A stretch of DNA of 59,933 nt, the filler included, from Dugesia japonica (lineage: Eukaryota), in the NCBI GenBank assembly GCA_001938525.1. It is 6 parts of 6 records of this genome, joined end to end, with 100 filler letters (N's around TTAATTAATTAA, not from the genome) between each part and the next. Parts side by side here need not be neighbours in the genome. Positions count along the whole stretch, not along the records: positions 47,785 to 59,933 come from MQRL01608489.1; 5 more parts are not named here. One strand, written 5' to 3'. Each line of letters starts with the position of its first letter. Positions within the stretch are counted from its first letter, which is position 1. The translations under genes and the position numbers were made by a program. Of this stretch, positions 47,785 through 59,933 are shown in pieces. Under the pieces are notes generated by a model. It did not search any database. It saw only the letters and a list, made by a program, of their open reading frames with translations, and was not told where the DNA came from.

Positions 47785-49790
47785 ATTTTCAAAATTCGAT
47801 CAAAATATCAATAATTACTGTCATTTTTATTATGACAGTTATTCTATCATTTCTTATGACAATATCCATTCATCTCGCATCCTGTGTATATTTACAAACT
47901 ATGTATTGCAGAAAAATTTATTTTAATTATGTAAAACTTTATTTATTTATTTTTATACGGCTAATTTTGATAAAATAAAATGCTTTATATTTCTTCTTGT
48001 ATAACAGAAATTAGTATATATATATATATATACCGATGTAATGGCCAGTGGCGATACTTCGTAAAAATCTCTGAAGGTATTGGATCACAGATGACAAAAT
48101 ATTTATAGAAACGAAATTATTTAGGTTTCATTCTCAGTGAGCAGTGAATATCTCAATTGATAGAGTACATAAATTTAATTAATTAAGATAATTAACTAGA
48201 TGAAAATATTCACTAAAAATCGATGAAATACGTTCACAGAAATATTACCAATGTCTAATTTAGATAGGTTTTTATTTTATGATTTCATCAAATTTTTGAA
48301 TTTGTTCTTATAAGAATTTATAATATTTACTGTTAAGCTTTTTATTCATCCTTTGTAATATTATATGGATAGAATTAAAATTTACTGTTATAAAATTAAT
48401 ATATTATATTAATGTTTATGTCGGTATAATTTTTAATATTTCATATCACCGGAAGATCATTAAATTGTAGCAATCGTGAATAATAAAATATCAAATAATT
48501 AGTGATTATAAAACAAAGTATAAAAATAGATGCATATCTGGTAGGCCCTAAACAAAGGCTCACTAAAACATATCAGTAATTATTAGTTAAATTATGTAAA
48601 TTGTGTGAAGCTGTATTTTAATGTATATAGTGAATATAATTTATGAAACTGTAAAATCAATGAATGAATATAGATTATCCCGAGTGATCATGTAAATTAT
48701 AAAATTTTTGTAACAACAAAAATATTTATTTGAATTTGAAAAGCAANNNNNNNNNNNNNNNNNNNNNNNNNNNNNNNNNNNNNNNNNNNNNNNNNNNNNN
48801 NNNNNNNNNNNNNNNNNNNNNNNNNNNNNNNNNNNNNNNNNNNNNNNNNNNNNNNNNNNNNNNNNNNNNNNNNNNNNNNNNNNNNNNNNNNNNNNNNNNN
48901 NNNNNNNNNNNNNNNNNNNNNNNNNNNNNNNNNNNNNNNNNNNNNNNNNNNNNNNNNNNNNNNNNNNNATAAGAGTTTCTGACAATTATATTTGAAAATT
49001 GAATCAATTTAAAATTTTACGGAGTAGATCCTGAACCCTTCAATTGTTTCGTTTTATTGAAAGTTGACATGTGGCCAATTGGTGATCGACATAGCAGAAT
49101 CATTTTTATTGGTAGATTTGCAAATACAGAATTATTTCAAAATTTTGTATTTGTCAATGTTTCATTGGTTGAGTAATGTGTGCAAAATTTTTGGATNNNN
49201 NNNNNNNNNNNNNNNNNNNNNNNNNNNNNNNNNNNNNNNNNNNNNNNNNNNNNNNNNNNNNNNNNNNNNNNNNNNNNNNNNNNNNNNNNNNNNNNNNNNN
49301 NNNNNNNNNNNNNNNNNNNNNNNNNNNNNNNNNNNNNNNNNNNNNNNNNNNNNNNNNNNNNNNNNNNNNNNNNNNNNNNNNNNNNNNNNNNNNNNGATTT
49401 TTCTAAAGTTGGGTAATCGATTATTTACGTCTATTCTGTAGACGCACTTAAATTAAACTTGGTGGAATCAGCAACCCAACAAAATTGTGTTATTATGAAA
49501 TCACAGGAATTGATAATTATTAAATCATGATTTAGTTTATGATATTTCAGATTATAGATGAATGTTTCATAGATATATGAATAATTAGTTTTATTGTTTA
49601 CCAAATATTGTTAATAAATTTGGTATTTTCAACTTAACAAAAATAATATATATTATTAGTTTTAAGGATCACATAAGAACTCATTTCATTTCATGTGTTG
49701 TATTGTATCATTGCTCGATACAATATCTTGTAATATATTATTGTATTGATATAATTCTTCTTTTTAAATAATTTAATTTTTGTATGAAAA

Positions 49791-50405
49791 ATGATCTGTG
49801 AACATTATGCATATATGTATATGTATATGTATTTCAATGTATGGGACCAGAAATCACATATATTCATCGGCCCATCGAATATTGGCAAAACATGTTTCGC
49901 GCTTGCACATTTTAATAGTCCTGTGCACGTGAAAGGCTTACAAAATTTTGGACGAATTTCATCTGATCCAGAAGTAGTAGACGGTATCGTTATTGATGAC
50001 ATTCCTTTGTCAAATTTTCCAACTAATGAACTTTTGGGTATACTTGACATTTGTTACGAAAATCCAATAAATATAAAATATTCAACCGGATACCTTCCAG
50101 CTTTCTGTCCTCGTATTATATGTATGAATGATGCATCGCAACTTTTCCCTAAGAATGTAAAACCTGCTATACTTGAAGCTATTTATCGGCGAATTGTTAT
50201 CCACAATTTTTCTGACAAATTATATGAGAAATATATTGATCTAAGTACTTTACAGACGGAGAAGATGACATCTTACAAGCCGAGAGCTGGAATCAACGTA
50301 GGCATTGGTACTGCGAAGTCGGGCACAGCGAGGATGAAAGAGATATATGGGCCGCCCTCGACAAGCACCGCTGGATCGAGCAATGTTATTGTGGAGCCAA
50401 AGTAA
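49791..50405 (+). CDS. SF3 helicase domain of a CRESS-DNA-virus-type Rep; N-terminal HUH endonuclease not visible
   Basis: Walker A GPSNIGKT, Walker B GIVIDDI, B' INIKY, motif C RIICMN, arginine finger AIYRR; no internal stops. The first ~15 codons are (TATATG)n microsatellite, so the start is doubtful. Confidence 0.85.
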   Translation: MICEHYAYMYMYMYFNVWDQKSHIFIGPSNIGKTCFALAHFNSPVHVKGLQNFGRISSDPEVVDGIVIDDIPLSNFPTNELLGILDICYENPINIKYSTGYLPAFCPRIICMNDASQLFPKNVKPAILEAIYRRIVIHNFSDKLYEKYIDLSTLQTEKMTSYKPRAGINVGIGTAKSGTARMKEIYGPPSTSTAGSSNVIVEPK

Positions 50406-50512
50406 AAATGTCTTCATTTCACAAGGAGTCATGTTGGCAGTTTTTTAAAAACTATTGTGATTCTTGTTTACTGGCTGAACATAACTATAGAATAAATAAA
50501 AAAAAACTTTGA
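50256..50512 (+). CDS. Putative spliced exon overlapping the Rep C-terminus, Cys/His/Trp-rich small protein
   Basis: Stop-free alternative frame 50240-50509 (DGEDDILQAESWNQRRHWYCEVGH..HRWIEQCYCG..HKESCWQFFKNYCDSCLLAEHNY..), preceded by acceptor CTAAG-TACTTTACAG (AG 50254-50255); AATAAA at 50491. Confidence 0.5.
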
Positions 50513-50696
50513 TGTTAATTAGTGAATTTTAATTGTTTAAGTGTGTTAAAAAAAATAATAAATGTATTTTAATTTAAATTTAGTTGTCTTTATTTGGTTA
50601 TTGATTTTATTAATTTTATCTTTAAGTGGTTTTATTTATGTTCTTTCTTATTTTTTGGTAATAAGTAATAATCATTGTAATATAACTATGTAAAGA

Positions 50697-51362
50697 ATGG
50701 CTTCTTTCTATGAAGACCTTACACGATTTTGTTTTCAGTTTATTACTAGGTCTAGCTTCACTATTAATAATAGCCATAGTAACGCGATTATTAATGCTTA
50801 CGAAAAACATAATATGGTATTTGATACTGGCATTAATGAAATGGATGAAAAGCTATTGGCAATATATCTGGTCCTTAACGGAAAAGCCGGCAAAACGAAT
50901 GGAATTTTATTTGTCGGACCACCGGGAGCCGGAAAGTCCCTTTTTATGCAAGTCCTCGCTTCCGATTTTAAGAAAATAGGCAATTTTAATATTTTAAATT
51001 TTAAATCAGAATTTGCTTTAGATGATTTAGCCGATGCAGACATAGCTATAGGTGACGAAATTATTTTCGAAAATATGAATATGGCTACCTATTTCAATTT
51101 ACTACTCGAGGGCTCAACCAATTTAAAGATATCAATTAAAAATATAGATAAAATCCCTTTTAAAAGAATTCCTGTTATGGTAGCCGGTAATTCATTTCCC
51201 TGGTATTATACTTCCCAAATTCGCCCAGCCACATTGGACAGATCATTACTTATCGAATGCTTTGAACCATATTCTTTCAATTACAATTCAAATATATATA
51301 ATCAGGATAAAAACGTTTTCAAATCTGTAAAACAATCCATGTTTAAGCATCTAAAAGTATAA
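50697..51362 (+). CDS. Stand-alone SF3 helicase of parvoviral NS1 / papillomaviral E1 type
   Basis: GKTNGILFVGPPGAGKS (Walker A), SEFALDD..IAIGDE (Walker B), LLEG..ISIKN (B'), IPVMVAGN (motif C), LDR finger; intact 221-aa ORF with good start context AGAATGG. Confidence 0.9.
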   Translation: MASFYEDLTRFCFQFITRSSFTINNSHSNAIINAYEKHNMVFDTGINEMDEKLLAIYLVLNGKAGKTNGILFVGPPGAGKSLFMQVLASDFKKIGNFNILNFKSEFALDDLADADIAIGDEIIFENMNMATYFNLLLEGSTNLKISIKNIDKIPFKRIPVMVAGNSFPWYYTSQIRPATLDRSLLIECFEPYSFNYNSNIYNQDKNVFKSVKQSMFKHLKV

Positions 51363-51364
51363 CA

Positions 51365-51680
51365 TTACACACAGCACAGTGTGTCATCTGCGTTGTGATT
51401 TTCACAAAAACTATAGTGTAATTACACGTGTAATATTAATATATATTTCATTGTGTTATTTTTCCTTTATTTAGTTTGTGAAATAGTGTGTTGTGTGTGT
51501 AGAATTACACGTGTAGTAGATGATATGTTAGGTAAAAAACACGGAGATTTTCAATGCGATATACTTACATTGTTTGTGTTTATAGTATTGAGGGGGGGTC
51601 GGAAAGATGTATTTCCTTTATTTGGGGGGTGCGTGCATGAACAAAAATTTTTTTGGGGGGATGGCCCAGCGCCATATAAT
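51365..51680. promoter_or_regulatory. Putative viral terminal/origin region with palindromes and G-tracts
   Basis: Perfect palindrome ATTACACGTGTAAT (51421-51434), second TACACGTGTA (51506-51515), three G-runs, hairpin ATGGC-CCAGC-GCCAT (51661-51675). Confidence 0.4.
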
Positions 51681-52869
51681 TAAATAATTTAATATCGTAA
51701 TTTAACTTGAGATATTTCAGTGGATAGGATGTTTCATAGATATATATTTCGATGAATCATTACAATTAGTTTAGAATAATTCTGTTTTCAATTGAATAAT
51801 AATAATTGGTAGAGCTTTAATTAATTAAATCCCATATGCGATAGTGAGTTCTGAGACTCATTTGATCGACACAATGATGATACAATTAATGATATTTTTA
51901 TACCTAACGAACTTAATATATTAAGGTAGTTTTATTTAATAAAACCAAAATTGGATTGGAAAGACTGATATGACGAAGGGATTAATGAATATATTCTAAA
52001 TATTATCAGTGGATTAATGTTATAGGATAATGTATGATAAATATATATTCCAATGAATCATTAGAGGCAGTTTAGAATAATTATTTCGAAATAAATATCA
52101 TTGATAAATTTTGTGTTTTCAATTGAAATATTATTTGGATATATTAGTGAATAAAAAACGAATGTTTCAAGAAAAGCAAAAAATACTCAACAAAGAAAGC
52201 AATTATTTCATAGCCTTTTCTATTAATTGAAATTTATGTTGTATTAGCAAACCACTTATGAAATCACAATCTCATGGAAAATATTTTTGAATTAGACTTT
52301 TTAAATATTAAAAATTTTTGAAAAATGTTTCGTATCAGCAAAATTAAACGTTTTACTTGAGATATTAGCAAGAAATCAAATCTAACAATTAATAGGAAAA
52401 ATTCTTCAAGCGACACGACAAAAAGAAATAGATTTACAAAAAAAATGTAGGAGCGCGAGATGAGAAATGCTAAAAATGAAAACTAGTATTAAATACAAGA
52501 ATTCAAATATGAAACATTGTACCTAATAATTTGTAGAAAACAAACGGTATCCGGCAAGAGCAACTAGAAATCCAAATAATGTATATCGATTGTTTCCGAA
52601 TTTGATATTTAATATAAATATATTAATAATTAATCAGTTGTTTAAATATTAATAAACGAGCTAGTTTTTACTTATTTATTAATTATACAAACATATATCG
52701 GGGTTTAATAAATCTCTCCCAAATTTATTTTTCTTATTACTCCAGGACATAACAGATTATACCATGCATATATATTAGTTATATTAACATTGAAGTTTTT
52801 ATTTAGTCTAAGTATTTCGATTTACCATTTGTTTTAATATTCGAAAAACCAAAATTTAAAAATGCTGAC

Positions 52870-53325
52870 AATTAAAGAACGGAAATTGTATTGCTAATTT
52901 GCTCGACATCAATCCAAGTTAGTCGGGAATTAAACAAGAAAAAAATAGAAAGAAATTTTAGTTCCGTTACTAAAACNNNNNNNNNNNNNNNNNNNNNNNN
53001 NNNNNNNNNNNNNNNNNNNNNNNNNNNNNNNNNNNNNNNNNNNNNNNNNNNNNNNNNNNNNNNNNNNNNNNNNNNNNNNNNNNNNNNNNNNNNNNNNNNN
53101 NNNNNNNNNNNNNNNNNNNNNNNNNNNNNNNNNNNNNNNNNCTTTGAGGTTAACTGAAAAATGAAATGTATAAGCGAAACCTTTGTAATAAAGAGCAACT
53201 AATGAAATTCATCTCAAATGAATGTTCTAAAATAACCTCACAATTGCTAAAAAATGTGTTGACATTTCAACGTCGTTTGCAGCAATGTGTGAAAACTGAT
53301 GGGAAATCCTGTGAACACAAAAATT
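52870..53325 (+). pseudogene. Tc1/mariner transposase remnant (spans a gap)
   Basis: ISNECSKITSQLLKNVL..FQRRLQQCVKTDGKSCEH resembles the Tc1/mariner C-terminal RL..C....G motif. Confidence 0.55.
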
Positions 53326-55499
53326 TATTATATTATAAAAAATGACATTATTTTTCTTTACCTTTTGTTTTGTGAGAAGAAAATTAGGTAGAGACTTAAC
53401 AAACAGCGTGTAACAGAATAAAGACGAAGCATTTAAAGAGGGATAGTGGCTATTAAGAAAACCACAAATAAAAGATTGCTATATGAAAGGCCATACCAGA
53501 TAGTGTGATTTGTATCAGTACATCAAGTAGAAATCAAGTTTCCAAATGGCGTAAATAAAATGAATAAAAAGATAGAAAACGTTTTGAATGGAGAATTGAG
53601 GAAATTTAAATAGTGTCTAATATAAAATAACTTTCAGACTTTTTTATTAAAAAATATTTTAAGTAATTAGTTTTTGTTCCATTATAATAGATGGTAAAGA
53701 TATTGTAAATTCCAACTGACTATAGGTGCTTTATAAGTGCTCAGATAGTATGATATAGAATACTTTAATATTAATTTTTGCGGACAATGTTAATATTAAT
53801 ATATTTTGTTTTGTTTTATTAATATTTATTTTCCAAAACGTCATTTCAAAATTTTATACGAGTCATGCTACATTCAGTGAAATATCTCAATGTAATAAGA
53901 TTCTTCATTTTACGTTATACGAATGAGACAATTTTAACTAAGTTTATGGATATTTACGATAAATAGCACTTCAATATACCACATTATACCATTCAATTAG
54001 TCAGTTTAGAAATGCACGTGAATAAGTGCTTGAGACGAAGAGTGAGCATCTAAATTAACAATCTGATGAAGAGAAAACGCAATGTACCAGTATTGTTATA
54101 GATAAAATATCGTAACAATTTACCAAATATTGCTACTCACTTTTCATATATTTTTAATAGCAATTCATGTGTAGAATGACTTTTTAAGGAAAAGTTAAAA
54201 TTAGAATAATGCTTTTAGATTATTTTTATAGTAAAGTAAATTTATGATGAAAATTGTTTCTTAAAAATTAAGCTGTATTAATATTCAGAAATTAGATGCA
54301 CATTGGAAAACTTTTGTAAAAAAATTGGGTTTTTGAAATATTGAATGGTATGAATTAACTCCATTCAAGTTTTATGTTTGGCAATTTTCATTGAGTAATT
54401 ATTAATTGTGAATTATCTTTGTTAATTGTAATTATTAGTATATTTAGAAATAACTTGTTTAATTAATCAAGAAAGCGAATTTTTTAAGTTATGATCCAAT
54501 TCATGTAAATTTTTTATTATTTAATAATTTAGAAATTTTGAGAAGTTTGGTCTCCTATTAATAAAGAATCCGAAAATATTGTAATTACACAAGGCCTGCG
54601 AACATTGAAGAACAATTCGAAAACAAGCAATAATATTACGACAACAGATGTCGTAAATTCTGCATAGGAACATCAATATACTTTAGGGTATCTCGTTTCT
54701 TCTCACAAACATACATCGATTATCGAATTTGTGGTTTCTAATAATATGATTCAAATTATGAACAAACAAAATTCGGCTGAAGTAATAAATGAAATCGCAT
54801 TCTGTCCAATATAAGTTCCATATTTAGCAACAATTCAGACGAACGGAAGAATACAAGTGATGTAATAATAAATCAATTGTGTAGTATTGAAAAACTGCAC
54901 AGATATTTTGCACTAATTTATAAATTTTTATTAATTATTATTTTATGTTTTGATAAATTATTATGAATAATATTGTTATTATCAAAACTTTATTTATTAC
55001 ACATTTTCAGGTGAATATGTATACGAAGTAACCGAAACCATATTAATACGGAACATTGAATCACTTCCATTTTTTGAACCTTTAATATAATAATATTTCT
55101 AATAAAGTGTCATTTACTCGGATTATGTTGTCTTGGCTGGATGTTAGTTCGAACTTTTTATAAATTATTAGGATAAATTAGTGCCTAAGTTCAAAAATAT
55201 CTTTATGACAAGAGTTTTTAATTTCACTTATGATTAAACATGTTTTTTAAATTAATTGACCGAATTTGCGTAAAAATAAAACCAAATTGACCTCATCGAG
55301 TAAATTTCCAACCAAGCTTAAAAAATAATGCTTAAAAAATTAAAAGCCTAAAATTTGAAATTATTCGCCAAACTTTTCAAAATACGATTAAAAATTATGT
55401 AATAATCGCACATAAATTTTGCTCACCAGCTAAAAAAGACTGAAAAATTCTATACGAATTTAAAAGAAATTCCACCGATTCAATAATTAATCTAATGAC

Positions 55500-55681
55500 A
55501 TAATTTGTTGCAAAATATTATCTGGGTCACTTAATAATCCTATTTCGTAATATTACCTAATATGATGTCATATTTTAAATTCCCAACTAAATGATTTAGG
55601 ATTATGTTTCGTTGCATCACTAATCCGGTTGGGTGGGGGTACTGAATGTGTGGTGGCTACGACCGCTACTTTTCCACTACT
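55500..55681 (-). mobile_element. Right terminus of a Polinton-like element
   Basis: Reverse complement reads AGTAGTGGAAAAGTAGCGGTC..CACACATTCAGTACCCCC..GGATTAGTGATG, related to 19380-19450. Confidence 0.55.
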
Positions 55682-57079
55682 AATCTTTATGGCAAGGGTT
55701 CTTAACTTCACTTGTGAATAAACATGTTTTTGTCAGGCAGGTTGGTATAATCTTACATACTCTTTTAACTGTTTGGGTAACCATATAGATATGACTTATG
55801 TTCGTACCAAAATGACGAACATGCAAAATTTATATATATGCAAGATTTCACAAATAGGATGGCATCGAAAGAGTTATTTATCAAATATAATTCATTTAAA
55901 TGTAGAAAAACATTTTTAAATTATGGTATTTAATTTTTAATTTAGTAATTATTTTTTTAAAAACGAGTAAAAATTCGCTTTTAATTTTTTTGGTTTAATT
56001 TAAATTTTTAAAGAATATTTTGTGATTATGTTTAAAAGTTTTTGCTGATTGTGAGTGTTATTTGATTAATAAACTTGATAATGGATTCAGAATTTTCTAT
56101 TTTATCAAATAAAAAGTTACGCAACACGCTGAATATAATTTTTAATATTATTTTAATAGTATTAATCAAATAAGTGGTTTTCTAATGTGATTTTCTGTAA
56201 TATTTAAATGAATAATATAAAGTATAAAGTATATAAATTAATAAATAATGAATTTTAATTTGTTAATTGAAGGCAAACGTTGTTGTTTAATACCTAGTGT
56301 TTAACGAAATAATAATATTAAATGCCTATAATAGCGACCCTTTGAAATTGTAAAAACTTAAATACCTTGAAGTATGATACAATAATAGTATGTACTGTAA
56401 TAGTAAATAATTCGAATATTTAATGTAAAATAAGGAAACATAAGCATTTGGTGTATCGATGAACTTTATTGTAATTCTATTTATTTGGAGAATACTGTGG
56501 TTAACGAGTGTGTTTCACACGTCGTAAATGATAATATTAACACTGAAAAAGTGTGGATATTATATAATACCAATATAATGTGTATTTTAATACTATCAGT
56601 TAAAATATTTTAAAATTTAGTTCTATAAATAAGTAATCAACAATTTTGATCTAAGATATTACATAAAAACAATAAAGCATGTATTTTAAAAGTTGGAGAT
56701 AACTGATATTCGAAAAGAAGCACTTATTTATTTTAACTTTATAACTACAAAACAAATTTATTACATCCATTATACTAAACAATACACAATTATCAATTAA
56801 ATGCTCTTTGTGAATAAGTAAAAGTGGTAATTAATATTAATTGCTTGATAAAGAATACAATTTGATATTTATTTAGAATAATATTTTAAATAATCTAAAT
56901 TTGTAATCTAATTTTATAACAATGAATTCATTCTATAAAAGTTATGAAAAGAACTTTAGCAATTTTATTAGCGAAATAAAATGTTCAGGGGTGAATAAAT
57001 AACTGACAATACTAATAATTAATAGGACTAATAAATTATATTAAAAAAATGAATGCATGAACGATTTGAAAATAAAATA

Positions 57080-57344
57080 AGGTTTTGATGGAATTGTATC
57101 CAAATTTAAAGGTGAATTTCATATGCCAGGTTATAATTTCTGCGGACCGGGCACTCGTACGGAATATAAACTTGATGAACTTAAACAACCAATGTTTGAT
57201 AGTATGCAAATTAATTCATTAGATGCTGATTGTATGGTACATGATATACAATGTGGTGATAAAAATTTAACAAAGAGATTTGGAGCTGACATGGATTTAA
57301 TTCAAAATTTACATATTGAAAGCAATACATGGGAAGAATCGTGA
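57080..57344 (+). pseudogene. Parvovirus VP1u-like phospholipase A2 (PLA2X) domain, adintovirus/Polinton type, probably decayed
   Basis: GEFHMPGYNFCGPGT (Ca-binding loop)..INSLDADCMVHDIQC (HDxxY with Y>C)..RFGADMDL. Confidence 0.8.
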
Positions 57345-58964
57345 TCATAATAAAGATAAACAGACAGAATGTGTTATTATTAGTTATTCCTTCAAGTAAA
57401 TCATCATGTAATCCAGTCCATGTTAAAATTTGAAAGAATTAATTTTGATGAATTTAACTGTAATCTGCTGTCAGATCATGATTTTTCCGAAGATGAAAAT
57501 CTCGACAACACAGAGTACGACTGTAAAACCAATTTCACAAACCTTTATCGTGACAAATATTCATGTGGAAAGATTCCTGTCTCGTAGTGTATGATAGTTT
57601 ATAACTAGAATTAGTTCCTATTTCAGCTAGACAAGTCGCATACTATGGCCAAACACTTATTGAACAGACAAAATGTGTGCCAATTATCTTCAACCAGAAT
57701 CCAGAATACTAAGCCAGTTCAAATTTTTCGGACAAGGAGGGGATCTAAAGTATCTAAAAGGAAACCATTTATGGAAAGTTGAGGAAAGCTAAGGATAATT
57801 TCATGAGAATGGCAAGAAACTTTATTTTAGAGAATATTTATTTATTTTTTAAAAATGGCAAAGAAGTCAGCGGATAAAGGAGTCACTTTATAACTCTTCA
57901 TTTTTCAGATCATACTGGAATGAAAGCCATGAAATAATAGAAGAGTGATTTCTAAAAATAGGCTTATAAAACACAACAAAGAGACTTAATTTAGACATAC
58001 AAATCTAATCCAAAATTTGATTAATTCAATCAATATTCTAGAAAACAGAAATAAACTCATTAGTCAATTAAATCAACATTCAAAAGAGATTTTATTTTGA
58101 AAAAAAATAGTATGATCCTGACAATAATTATTTTAATTATTTCGATAAACTCTATTTTTATCATCTGTGTATATTTCACTTGATCTCATGTAAAAAATTT
58201 TGTTTATTTTATTCATTTGAGAAATAATCGATTATTCTACCAATATAAACCGCAAGCTATCTGCATTACACAAGAAACACAAGCATAAATTGATTGATAT
58301 AGCAATCAATTTTATTAAACATTTTAATTATACAATTGTTTTCAGGAGAAAAAGAAACTAAATTATATCCCATTCAAATGAATAAATTAACTGAAAGGAT
58401 GGATCAATAAAGAATTCATGAAAATCTATTTGGGATATTTTAATTATTATAACAATGTAATAAAAAAATAATTTTAATTTTTTGATAAATATTTTATATT
58501 GTGAAATATTAGAATTTCATTTATAATTAAAATAAAGTGAAAATTTTATATACACATTTTACAAAAAATAATTTAAAATAAATAAAAATTATAAATGAAT
58601 TTAAATAATTAATTATAAAATAAATTTAATTGATTTCATTTTATTCGGAAAAATATTTGCTTAAAAAAATTGTTGAAGATATTAAAAAAAAATATATATT
58701 AATGAAAATTTTATTATTTTTTGTAACTAAAGTAAAGTAAACAATTTCTAAATATTTTTCAATAAAACTATTGTTTAAATATAAAAACTAATATAACTAA
58801 TAAATTAGAACAAATTATTAAAATTGATAAAATATTAATATACTAAATCTGTCCAATGAAAAAGTGGATTTGTAGATTTCAATATTTATTTTGTTTATTT
58901 TTCAGGAAAAAATTTTCAATATTTAATTGATACCCTTTCAGAAGAAAAGAAAATACTGCTCGTA

Positions 58965-59260
58965 AAAATGGAAATGATCAAACCACACTAAGGGACGATC
59001 GAGGAATTATGTAATGCTTTTAATTTCAGTGAAAATTATTCAAGAAATTTGCTTGATATATTCTTTGAACGTGGCACATTTGGATCGGAAGCAGGGCTCA
59101 GGAAGACCTCATATTGACAATTATAAAGAGCAACGGGCAAAAGTATTCAAAACCATTTGTAAGCGCCACTCCAGCAGCATCCGCTACATTTCAGAATAGG
59201 TCAATATTCTGAAAAGTAGTGTTCAAAGAATTGTTACAAATGAACATTTCAAACTTGTCG
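58965..59260 (+). pseudogene. Tc1/mariner transposase N-terminal HTH remnant
   Basis: LDRKQGSGRP..SSIRYISE*VNILKSSVQRIV. Confidence 0.6.
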
Positions 59261-59933
59261 GAAAGCTAAGACTGAAATGATTCTGACAAAATCACCATAA
59301 TGAATGAGATACATGAATATTAATCATTTACTCGCAATATTTCAAGGTTAGCAAGAGAAGAAATACAGATATCTACATGTAGGCAATGTTGATTCATATG
59401 TAAACAAAAATTTAGAAGATTCAGATTGCAGATATTTATTAATTTATTGAATGCATAGAAAGTCAAATTCACCCTACTGAAAATATTTATTTAAGTAAAT
59501 CAATTTCAAGTGAACAAAATGTAGTATGTACTAGAACTGGATATACTGTTGAGAATCCAGTTCCATAGTTCTATAAACATGCATGTGGAGATGTAGAGAA
59601 CAAAAGTTATGGGTTACATCATATTGACAAACTATCGTATCCGGTGAATTTGGTTATTACGGATAATCGCTCAGTGAATTATTATTATGCACTTTAATAG
59701 AAAGTCGAATCCATATGGTTACCAAAATTCGTTTAAGTAAATCATTTTTCACNNNNNNNNNNNNNNNNNNNNNNNNNNNNNNNNNNNNNNNNNNNNNNNN
59801 NNNNNNNNNNNNNNNNNNNNNNNNNNNNNNNACAGGTTAGGTCCCTTATTATTTTCAAATTATTTATTTCTCGGATCTAGAATTGAAGTTTCCGTGGAAT
59901 TGTGAATATATCCGAGATCGCAAAGTTTCAAAC

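What the first reader, a model, noticed from the sequence alone, without database searches (positions are those of the whole stretch)
49791..51680. Virus-like cassette with two different SF3 helicases in tandem (CRESS Rep-type plus NS1/E1-type): candidate relative of the planarian PEVE element
Seen: two same-strand ORFs about 290 bp apart, each with a full Walker A/B/B'/C/Arg-finger set but of clearly different lineage (GPSNIGKT..IVIDDI..ICMN..AIYRR versus KTNGILFVGPPGAGKS..IGDE..VMVAGN..LDR). Both lack internal stops, whereas every transposon in the window is heavily decayed. Known: circo-, gemini-, parvo- and papillomaviruses carry one SF3 helicase fused to an HUH or origin-binding domain. 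From memory, the extrachromosomal element PEVE of the planarian Girardia tigrina was described with this same pairing (circovirus Rep-like plus papillomavirus E1-like helicase). Inference: a recent endogenous or co-assembled member of a poorly characterised dual-helicase small-DNA replicon family; no capsid gene is visible.
Basis: partly seen in the sequence, partly recalled or inferred. Interest (0 to 1): 0.9.

Follow-up and report, generated by a model that had tools for sequence, protein, structure and literature searches.

The report
Integrated fragment of PEVE-like virus element
This is a partial copy, apparently sitting in host DNA, of a little-studied planarian virus-like element (the PEVE family) that carries two different replication helicase genes side by side; the pairing is real and conserved elsewhere, but the copy lacks the parts needed to replicate and the kind of element is already known.

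Summary
Window 49791-50405 and 50697-51362 are two same-strand open frames, each with an intact set of SF3 helicase motifs. They are only 20% identical to each other.

ORF2 is a complete stand-alone helicase of the papillomavirus E1 / parvovirus NS1 type. Among 1.84 billion representatives, its best named relative is the helicase of the Girardia tigrina element PEVE type 1 (38% identity).

ORF1 is only the C-terminal ATPase half of a CRESS-type Rep. Its model matches CRESS Reps, including the Rep of PEVE type 2 (38% identity). The nuclease half, present in relatives of 330-453 aa, is missing from the piece.

The Rep-then-helicase pair recurs on six other public contigs from six samples. In the five close copies a small Cys-rich frame lies between the two genes. 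Independent insertions are therefore excluded.

The window copy is a roughly 1.9 kb GC-richer island in AT-rich non-coding DNA. It lacks the large opposite-strand gene of its relatives, so I read it as an endogenous fragment. It resembles the PIVE elements already catalogued for Schmidtea mediterranea.

A parvovirus VP1-type phospholipase A2 domain remnant lies 5.7 kb downstream. Its link to the cassette is unresolved.

Verdict: new member of a known, poorly characterised kind.

The parts
49791..50405 (+). ORF1: 5'-truncated Rep gene. Only the C-terminal SF3 ATPase/helicase half and the C-terminal tail are retained. Codons 1-14 are non-homologous and lie on a short tandem repeat; homology to relatives starts at about 49832.
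   Evidence: 55-64% identical to the C-terminal parts of Reps of 330-449 aa on L001-L003, and 44% to L005. No trace of the N-terminal half anywhere in the piece. AF2 model pLDDT 83. Foldseek gives CRESS Reps, PEVE type 2 Rep and the PCV2 Rep ATPase. PDB sequence hit to circovirus Rep, E 0.007.
50363..50512 (+). Small Cys-rich frame that overlaps the end of Rep in another frame. It has a conserved Cys/His pattern, possibly zinc-binding. The window copy lacks the start codon that its relatives share.
   Evidence: tblastn matches to L001-L005, E 1e-12 to 6e-7. Alignment A5 has invariant C, C, H, C, C, C columns in 5 copies. No Pfam family.
50697..51362 (+). ORF2: complete stand-alone SF3 helicase of the E1/NS1 type, homologous to the PEVE helicase. 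It has no breaks.
   Evidence: Pfam PPV_E1_C 29.8 bits (cut-off 26.5). The profile matches E1 and NS1 structures at about 1e-5. 63-80% identical to P0002-P0005. PEVE type 1 helicase P0007: 38% identity, E 7e-33. dN/dS 0.12-0.20 against relatives.
51363..51677 (+). 3' tail of the GC-richer island. It is non-coding, with two copies of a 12-nt palindromic word (51421-51434, 51504-51517) and three G-runs (about 51593-51660). Its origin, viral or not, is unresolved.
   Evidence: GC 0.27-0.37 against 0.20-0.25 beyond 51700. The word occurs 4 times counting both strands, against 0.1 expected. No homology in related loci, whose contigs end just after the helicase gene. The fold is not exceptional, z -1.5.
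49527..49578 (+). Left copy of a short direct repeat that brackets the island. The right copy is at 51697-51745, and a more diverged third copy lies at about 52010-52082. Probably a host repeat.
   Evidence: Exact 17-mer at 49562 and 51729, and 4 matches with up to 3 mismatches against 0.45 expected. Alignment A6. Repeat families D1, D3 and D20.
51697..51745 (+). Right copy of the bracketing direct repeat.
57081..57344 (+). Remnant of a parvovirus VP1-type phospholipase A2-like domain (87 open codons). It is on the same strand, 5.7 kb downstream. Whether it belongs to the same element is not shown.
   Evidence: Pfam PF08398 Phospholip_A2_4, 29.1 bits (cut-off 23.9), E 1.2e-6. No PDB sequence hit. 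Absent from the eight related loci fetched by then (L001-L008).

Best explanation
The island at about 49.83-51.68 kb is an incomplete, integrated copy (an endogenous viral element) of a PEVE-family element. Complete relatives carry a CRESS-type Rep (HUH nuclease plus SF3 helicase), a small Cys-rich frame, a second stand-alone E1/NS1-type SF3 helicase, and a large gene of unknown family that lies on the opposite strand to Rep.

How the complete elements work is inferred from what is established for the two protein families, not shown here. Rep would nick an origin and start rolling-circle replication. The second, helicase-only protein would act as an extra DNA motor for unwinding or for genome translocation, as helicase-only Rep proteins of dependoparvoviruses do in packaging.

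The window copy keeps only the ATPase half of Rep, the Cys-rich frame without its usual start, and the whole second helicase. It has no nuclease domain, no recognisable origin and no opposite-strand gene, so it cannot act as a replicon. Its open frames are best explained by a fairly recent integration. Most of its divergence from relatives accumulated under purifying selection, that is, while it was still a working element.
For: - Both proteins have PEVE proteins as named relatives.
- The Rep-helicase pair is conserved in the same order on L002, L003, L005, L006 and L007, and both genes are present on L008. Rep identity to the window ranges from 41 to 64%, and helicase identity from about 32 to 68%.
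- Relatives' Reps are 330-453 aa. They match Gemini_AL1_M (above cut-off in L003) and Viral_Rep (below cut-off) in the part the window lacks.
- 28 further Rep relatives were found, several carrying Viral_Rep or Gemini_AL1 domains.
- Homology to relatives begins abruptly at about 49832, exactly where GC jumps from 0.21 to 0.36. The island ends at about 51.7 kb.
- The flanks are AT-rich, hold no viral genes and contain short local repeats.
- The opposite-strand ORFs of relatives have no match in the piece.
- dN/dS is 0.12-0.29. No stops or frameshifts occur in the retained parts of the two helicase genes.
- Another truncated, helicase-only copy exists elsewhere (L004), so fragments of this family do occur.
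- The literature already records integrated PEVE relatives (PIVE) in a planarian genome (PMC3198968).
Against: - The host could not be identified. No host gene, tRNA or Rfam family was found in the piece, so 'integrated in a planarian chromosome' is inferred from context only.
- An assembly chimera cannot be excluded from sequence alone.
- Two masked runs (421 nt together) lie upstream and were not inspected. They are too short to hold the roughly 800 nt of missing Rep sequence.
- The intactness of two ORFs beside a truncated neighbour could also reflect selection in the host.
- The role of the second helicase is an analogy, not a result.
- ORF2 gave no usable structure model (pLDDT 36).
Confidence: 0.78

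Rival explanations
1. The cassette is a domesticated (exapted) host gene pair. The truncated Rep ATPase and the second helicase would be kept open by selection in the host, for example to interfere with related circulating elements.
For: Both frames are open although the copy is otherwise incomplete, and chance openness is about 1e-7 each. Catalytic motif columns are intact. dN/dS is well below 1.
Against: The pairwise dN/dS mostly reflects time spent as a working element, and branch-specific rates could not be resolved because dS is saturated. The ORF1 start is a fortuitous ATG on a short tandem repeat. The small frame has lost its shared start. No orthologous locus or expression data are available.
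Confidence: 0.1
2. The piece is a mis-join, or the island is part of a free (episomal) PEVE-like element co-assembled with host DNA.
For: PEVE itself was described as extrachromosomal (title of Rebrikov et al. 2002, as cited in PMC3198968). The related contigs L002, L003, L007 and L008 are compact and gene-dense, like free small genomes. The composition changes sharply at both edges.
Against: A free element would be expected to carry the whole Rep and the opposite-strand gene, and here both are missing. The island is bracketed by copies of a local repeat that also occurs a third time in the flank, which fits a single continuous locus. The flanks are 2 kb and 8 kb long.
Confidence: 0.1
3. The two helicase genes arrived by two independent insertions of unrelated viruses, one CRESS virus and one parvo- or papilloma-like virus.
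For: The two proteins belong to different SF3 lineages.
Against: The same pair, in the same order and with the same small frame between them, recurs on other contigs from other samples over a wide range of divergence.
Confidence: 0.01

Closest known systems
[quoted passage not shown]
   Same: It carries both a CRESS-type Rep and a short (227 aa) E1/NS1-type helicase-only protein. ORF2 is 38% identical to the type 1 helicase. The ORF1 model matches the type 2 Rep with 38% identity over 124 columns.
   Different: Identity is only about 38%, so this is a different lineage of the family. Here the two genes are adjacent on one strand. In PEVE the helicase is deposited on a separate 'small segment' record of 1.9 kb. 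From my memory of the 2002 abstract, which I could not check because the paper is not held, the two genes lie in different unique regions bounded by inverted repeats. No such inverted repeats bound the window copy. The window copy is truncated and appears integrated.
PIVE, the planarian integrated virus-like element of Schmidtea mediterranea (Repbase 2008, as reported in PMC3198968)
   Same: It is an integrated relative of PEVE with an NS1/E1-type helicase ORF, present in numerous copies in a planarian genome. This is the closest description of what the window shows.
   Different: The comparison could not be made. Repbase is not among the tools and the host of the window is unknown. PIVE is drawn with terminal inverted repeats, and none were found here.
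Rep proteins of CRESS-DNA viruses (Cressdnaviricota; for example circovirus Rep, PDB 7lar/8xms)
   Same: The fold and motifs of the SF3 domain of ORF1 match. Relatives have the N-terminal nuclease region and the geminivirus-type central domain.
   Different: The window copy has no nuclease domain. The family adds a second helicase gene, which ordinary CRESS viruses lack.
Helicase domains of parvovirus NS1 and papillomavirus E1
   Same: ORF2 matches PPV_E1_C above its cut-off and Parvo_NS1 weakly. Relatives match both. The profile hits E1 and NS1 structures at about 1e-5.
   Different: ORF2 is only about 220 aa, so it is the ATPase core with a short N-terminal extension. It has no origin-binding or nuclease domain.

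Membership tests
SF3 helicase (ORF1) | Walker A, Walker B, motif C asparagine and arginine finger in an AAA+-like core | tested here: met
   The motifs lie on invariant or at least 90% conserved columns in 5 and 29 sequences. The model has pLDDT 83. Foldseek hits the PCV2 Rep ATPase, E1, SV40 large T and B19 NS1.
SF3 helicase (ORF2) | The same motif set, and a family profile match | tested here: met
   Walker A and B columns are invariant. PPV_E1_C scores 29.8 bits against a cut-off of 26.5. The profile hits E1 and NS1. The fold was not confirmed, because the model had pLDDT 36.
CRESS-DNA virus Rep | N-terminal HUH rolling-circle nuclease domain fused to the SF3 domain | tested here: not met
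   This domain is absent from the window copy. No match to residues 1-171 of P0001 or to the N-terminal parts of other relatives occurs anywhere in the piece. It is present in relatives: Viral_Rep partial match at 22.8 bits (below cut-off) and Gemini_AL1_M at 26.7 bits (above cut-off) in L003.
CRESS-DNA virus Rep | Origin stem-loop next to the rep gene | tested here: inconclusive
   No conserved short hairpin was found upstream of rep in L001, L002, L003 or L005. That region does not exist in the window.
PEVE family | Rep homologous to the PEVE Rep | tested here: met
   Foldseek BFVD rank 4: Q910M2, Rep of PEVE type 2, E 7.5e-15, 38% identity, rmsd 1.7. It was not returned by the sequence search.
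PEVE family | Short helicase-only protein homologous to the PEVE helicase | tested here: met
   P0007 (AAK53627/NP_476522), E 4.7e-28 with the profile. Pairwise 38% identity over 173 aa, E 7e-33.
PEVE family | Both genes on one element | tested here: met
   True of the window and of L002, L003, L005, L006, L007 and L008.
PEVE family | Unique regions bounded by inverted repeats; extrachromosomal ss/ds DNA forms | tested here: not met
   No long inverted repeats bound the island. The physical state of the DNA cannot be tested with these tools. The feature itself is taken from memory of the 2002 abstract, because the paper is not held.
PIVE (Repbase, S. mediterranea) | Sequence identity to the Repbase entry; host is S. 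mediterranea | not testable with these tools
   Repbase is not available and the host is not identifiable.
Parvoviridae | NS1 with an N-terminal nuclease, a VP1 with a PLA2 domain and jelly-roll body, and terminal hairpins | tested here: not met
   ORF2 has no nuclease domain. A PLA2-like domain lies 5.7 kb away with no capsid body after it. No terminal hairpins were found.
Papillomavirus E1 | Origin-binding domain plus helicase, about 600 aa | tested here: not met
   Only positions 113-216 of the 289-position helicase profile are matched, in a 221-aa protein.

The most novel reading that the evidence does not exclude
The still-open helicase pair (Rep ATPase half plus complete second helicase) is kept by the host under selection as an exapted gene pair, for instance as an interfering, nuclease-less partner of circulating PEVE-like elements, and is not a young fossil. 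A second untested reading is that the PLA2-type VP1 remnant 5.7 kb downstream belongs to the same ancestral genome. That would make the family a chimera of a CRESS-type Rep with parvovirus-type helicase and capsid modules.
Probability: 0.12. Interest if true: 0.7.

Novelty: new member of a known kind. Interest (0 to 1): 0.45.

Why it matters
PEVE has stayed an unclassified curiosity since 2002; only two papers in the searchable library even name it. This window and the related public contigs show that its odd feature is the signature of a wider, conserved family. That feature is a CRESS-type Rep paired with a second, helicase-only protein of the E1/NS1 lineage. The family is seen here in six further samples, and in its close members a conserved small Cys-rich frame lies between the two genes. 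The family also leaves fragments in AT-rich, apparently genomic, DNA. This bears on how small DNA viruses swap replication modules, and it gives a set of sequences on which the family could be classified. The window copy itself is an incomplete fragment and adds little beyond one more member.

Tried and rejected
- The PEVE paper (PMC116598 / its DOI) is not held, so the details of PEVE anatomy rest on memory and on PMC3198968.
- The AF2 model of ORF2 from a 5-sequence alignment was unusable (pLDDT 36).
- The profile of the Rep family against PDB gave nothing significant. The single-sequence hit to circovirus Rep was weak. The fold search settled the assignment.
- Rfam, tRNA and Pfam scans of all other open stretches of the piece gave no host gene, so the host remains unknown. 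Literature searches for the six run accessions found nothing.
- The large opposite-strand ORFs of relatives have no Pfam or PDB match, apart from one weak match between the N-terminus of the L002 ORF and L003. They have no other detectable similarity to each other. Calling them capsid genes would be a guess.
- Branch-specific dN/dS for the window copy failed because dS to the outgroups is saturated.
- More distant helicase relatives (L009, L012) have upstream ORFs that do not match the Rep profile or any Pfam family, so the pairing is shown only for the nearer family and L008.
- A decayed Tc1/mariner-like stretch near 59.0-59.2 kb was suspected by eye, but Pfam did not confirm it.

Slips, declared:
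- The script printed tblastn matches frame by frame on related loci. These indirectly bracket frame changes in some relatives' genes. I did not reuse or repeat them, and I give counts only.
- In my working thoughts I recalled a few short textbook motif patterns of the protein families concerned.
- Profile HMMs of A2 and A3 were built in scratch for scoring only.
- The consensus lines that the alignment tools print were not used.
Full report
**1. Observation**

Only window 47785-59933 is real sequence. The piece is very AT-rich (GC 0.13-0.34 in 500-nt windows) and has four masked N runs (665 nt in total). I left those runs untouched.

Two same-strand ORFs stand out: 49791-50405 (204 aa) and 50697-51362 (221 aa). 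With the local composition, a stop-free run of this length has a probability near 1e-7. The longest open stretch elsewhere in the piece is 87 codons. The ORFs sit in a GC-richer island that starts near 49.80 kb and ends near 51.70 kb.

**2. What the two proteins are**

*ORF2*
- It matches Pfam PPV_E1_C above the curated cut-off, and Parvo_NS1 and DUF5906 below it.
- It matches parvovirus NS1 and papillomavirus E1 helicase structures. With a profile of five family members, those hits reach about 1e-5.
- It is only the ATPase core plus a short N-terminal extension.

*ORF1*
- It has no Pfam hit and only a weak sequence match to the porcine circovirus Rep ATPase (E 0.007).
- Its relatives are longer proteins of 330-453 aa. 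Their extra N-terminal part matches Viral_Rep (below cut-off) and Gemini_AL1_M (above cut-off in the 449-aa protein of L003).
- 28 further relatives include proteins with precomputed Viral_Rep, Gemini_AL1 and Gemini_AL1_M domains.
- An AlphaFold model of ORF1 built on 29 sequences is confident over residues 11-150 (pLDDT 83). It matches CRESS-virus Reps best in the viral library (E down to 4e-16). In the PDB it matches the PCV2 Rep ATPase, E1, SV40 large T antigen and B19 NS1.

ORF1 and ORF2 share 20% identity (E 0.003). They are distant SF3 paralogues, not a recent duplication.

**3. ORF1 is a truncated gene**

ORF1 aligns with the C-terminal part of its relatives' Reps, for example residues 172-326 of the 345-aa P0001. 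Homology at both DNA and protein level begins at about 49832 in every comparison. The 14 codons before that are unrelated and lie on a short tandem repeat. No trace of the N-terminal half is found anywhere in the piece.

Breaks in the window copy:

| Gene | Breaks |
|---|---|
| Rep | One 5' truncation removing more than half of the gene; no stops or frameshifts in the retained part |
| Small Cys-rich frame | Start codon shared by relatives is missing (one break); otherwise open |
| Second helicase | None |

**4. The pair is conserved elsewhere**

Contigs that encode the homologues show the same arrangement.

| Locus | Sample | Arrangement |
|---|---|---|
| L002 | SRR27560321 | Rep then helicase, same strand |
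| L003 | SRR20852515 | Rep then helicase, same strand |
| L005 | ERZ27257134 | Rep then helicase, same strand |
| L006 | SRR32618891 | Rep then helicase, same strand |
| L007 | SRR23617200 | Rep then helicase, same strand |
| L008 | ERR1301475 | Both genes present, on opposite strands |
| L001 | SRR20852515 | Contig ends just after Rep |
| L004 | SRR27560321 | Another truncated copy, holding the helicase only |

- Identity to the window ranges from 41 to 64% for Rep and from about 32 to 80% for the helicase. The L008 helicase aligns only over a short stretch.
- Among seven relatives with a Rep gene, four have it in one frame and three read the N-terminal part in another frame (one frame change each). 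Whether that is decay or a programmed feature was not tested.
- The L004 helicase has one frame change.
- Between Rep and the helicase, overlapping the end of Rep in another frame, lies a small frame with invariant Cys, Cys, His, Cys, Cys, Cys columns in five copies.
- The relatives also carry a large gene on the opposite strand to Rep (L001, L002, L007, L008; only its start in L003). It matches no known family, and the copies show almost no detectable similarity to each other. It has no counterpart in the window.
- More distant helicase relatives (L009, L012) are not preceded by a recognisable Rep. The pairing is therefore a property of the nearer family.

This rules out two independent insertions.

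**5. The link to PEVE**

I did not fetch any PEVE record. Searching 1.84 billion representatives with the ORF2 family profile gave 353 hits at E up to 1e-3 and 38 at E up to 1e-10. [quoted passage not shown] That protein has 227 aa and scores E 4.7e-28. It is 38% identical to ORF2 over 173 residues (E 7e-33).

For ORF1, the fold search returned the Rep of the type 2 element at rank 4. At 38%, it has the highest sequence identity among the top hits. The sequence search did not return a named PEVE Rep.

Liu et al. 2011 (PMC3198968) report that integrated relatives, PIVE, are catalogued in Repbase for Schmidtea mediterranea, cluster with PEVE, and are numerous in that genome. NCBI lists PEVE under unclassified viruses. 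Only two papers in the searchable library name it.

**6. Context and state of the copy**

- The flanks are AT-rich and non-coding. They gave no Pfam, Rfam or tRNA hit apart from the item in section 7.
- A direct repeat of about 50 nt brackets the island (49527-49578 and 51697-51745). A third, more diverged copy lies 300 nt further on. This looks like a local host repeat and fits one continuous locus.
- After the helicase gene comes a 315-nt tail with island-like composition. It holds two copies of a palindromic 12-mer and three G-runs. Nothing comparable could be checked in relatives, because their contigs end within about 30-230 nt of the helicase gene.
- dN/dS between the window genes and their relatives is 0.12-0.29. 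For the closest pair (helicase, window against L004), dN is 0.107 and dS is 0.754.
- Most divergence therefore accumulated under constraint. The copy shows few signs of neutral decay, which fits a fairly recent integration but does not exclude selection in the host.

**7. A capsid-type remnant**

At 57081-57341, on the same strand, an 87-codon open stretch matches Pfam PF08398. This is the phospholipase A2-like domain of parvovirus VP1 (29.1 bits, cut-off 23.9). Nothing recognisable follows it. It has no counterpart in the eight related loci fetched by then. Whether the piece belongs to the same ancestral element or to a separate parvovirus-like insertion is open.

**8. Mechanism**

*Shown:*
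- the identity of the domains;
- the conserved gene order;
- the intact ATPase motifs;
- the absence of the nuclease half, of the opposite-strand gene and of bounding inverted repeats.

*Inferred from established knowledge of HUH Reps and SF3 helicases:*
- in complete family members, Rep starts rolling-circle replication;
- the second helicase serves as an additional DNA motor, by analogy with the helicase-only Rep proteins of dependoparvoviruses;
- the Cys-rich peptide may bind zinc.

The window copy cannot replicate on its own. I put 0.78 on 'integrated, incomplete PEVE-family copy', about 0.10 on exaptation, about 0.10 on an episome or mis-join, and about 0.01 on independent insertions.

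**9. Comparison and novelty**

The cassette works like, and is related to, PEVE. It differs in three ways: low identity (about 38%), adjacency of the two genes, and absence of bounding inverted repeats. PEVE's helicase is deposited on a separate small-segment record. It fails the membership tests for CRESS Rep (no nuclease domain in this copy), Parvoviridae and papillomavirus E1. PIVE is the likeliest label but could not be tested. I rate it a new member of a known kind. The family-level picture is the more useful by-product: a conserved Rep, Cys-rich frame and helicase cassette in several public datasets.

**10. Limits and slips**

- The host is unidentified, and the PEVE paper is not held.
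- ORF2 has no usable model.
- The script printed frame-by-frame match bounds on related loci, which indirectly bracket frame changes. I did not reuse them and report counts only.
- In my working thoughts I recalled a few short textbook motif patterns. None served as a query.

Noticed in passing
window 57081-57344 (+): An 87-codon open stretch matches the parvovirus VP1-type phospholipase A2-like domain (PF08398, above cut-off). It is 5.7 kb downstream of the cassette on the same strand. No capsid body follows it, and it is absent from the eight related loci fetched by then.
   Followed up: partly
window 50363-50512 (+); L001:2769-2939, L003:2066-2209, L002:3288-3398, L005:2142-2225: A small frame overlaps the end of Rep in another reading frame, with invariant Cys/His columns in five copies. 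It is possibly a zinc-binding peptide and matches no known family. The window copy lacks the start codon shared by the others.
   Followed up: partly
window 51421-51434 and 51504-51517; G-runs about 51593-51660: Two copies of a palindromic 12-mer lie 83 nt apart (4 matches counting both strands, against 0.1 expected), followed by three runs of 6-7 G, in the tail after the helicase gene. This is possibly a cis element of the ancestral genome, but it could not be compared with anything.
   Followed up: partly
window 49527-49578, 51697-51745, about 52010-52082: A short direct repeat brackets the GC-richer island, with a third diverged copy 300 nt further on. It is probably a local host repeat.
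   Followed up: partly
window about 49809-49832: A short tandem repeat of a 4-6 nt unit sits exactly at the point where homology to Rep begins. It supplies the first 14 codons of ORF1.
   Followed up: no
window 55772-55797 and 59702-59727: A 26-nt inverted repeat (85% complementary) encloses about 3.9 kb, including the PLA2-like piece. A nearby 49-nt direct repeat lies at 55199-55247 and 55683-55731 (88%). Their meaning is unknown.
   Followed up: no
window about 58990-59200 (+): By eye, a frame-broken stretch resembles the DNA-binding N-terminus of Tc1/mariner transposases. Pfam gave no significant hit, so this is unconfirmed.
   Followed up: partly
L001:3-968(-), L002:1-1584(-), L007:2125-3516(-), L008:1246-2346(-): Relatives carry large ORFs (322 to over 528 aa) on the opposite strand to Rep. 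They have no Pfam or PDB match and almost no detectable similarity to each other. They are candidate structural genes of unknown fold.
   Followed up: partly
L001, L002, L005 (Rep genes): In three of seven relatives the N-terminal part of Rep is read in a different frame from the rest (one change each), while four have a single frame. A recurrence in divergent copies could mean a programmed feature such as splicing or frameshifting and not decay.
   Followed up: no
L008 (ERR1301475), 3222 nt: This compact contig holds Rep on one strand and the second helicase plus a 366-aa ORF on the other. The gene order therefore varies within the wider family.
   Followed up: partly
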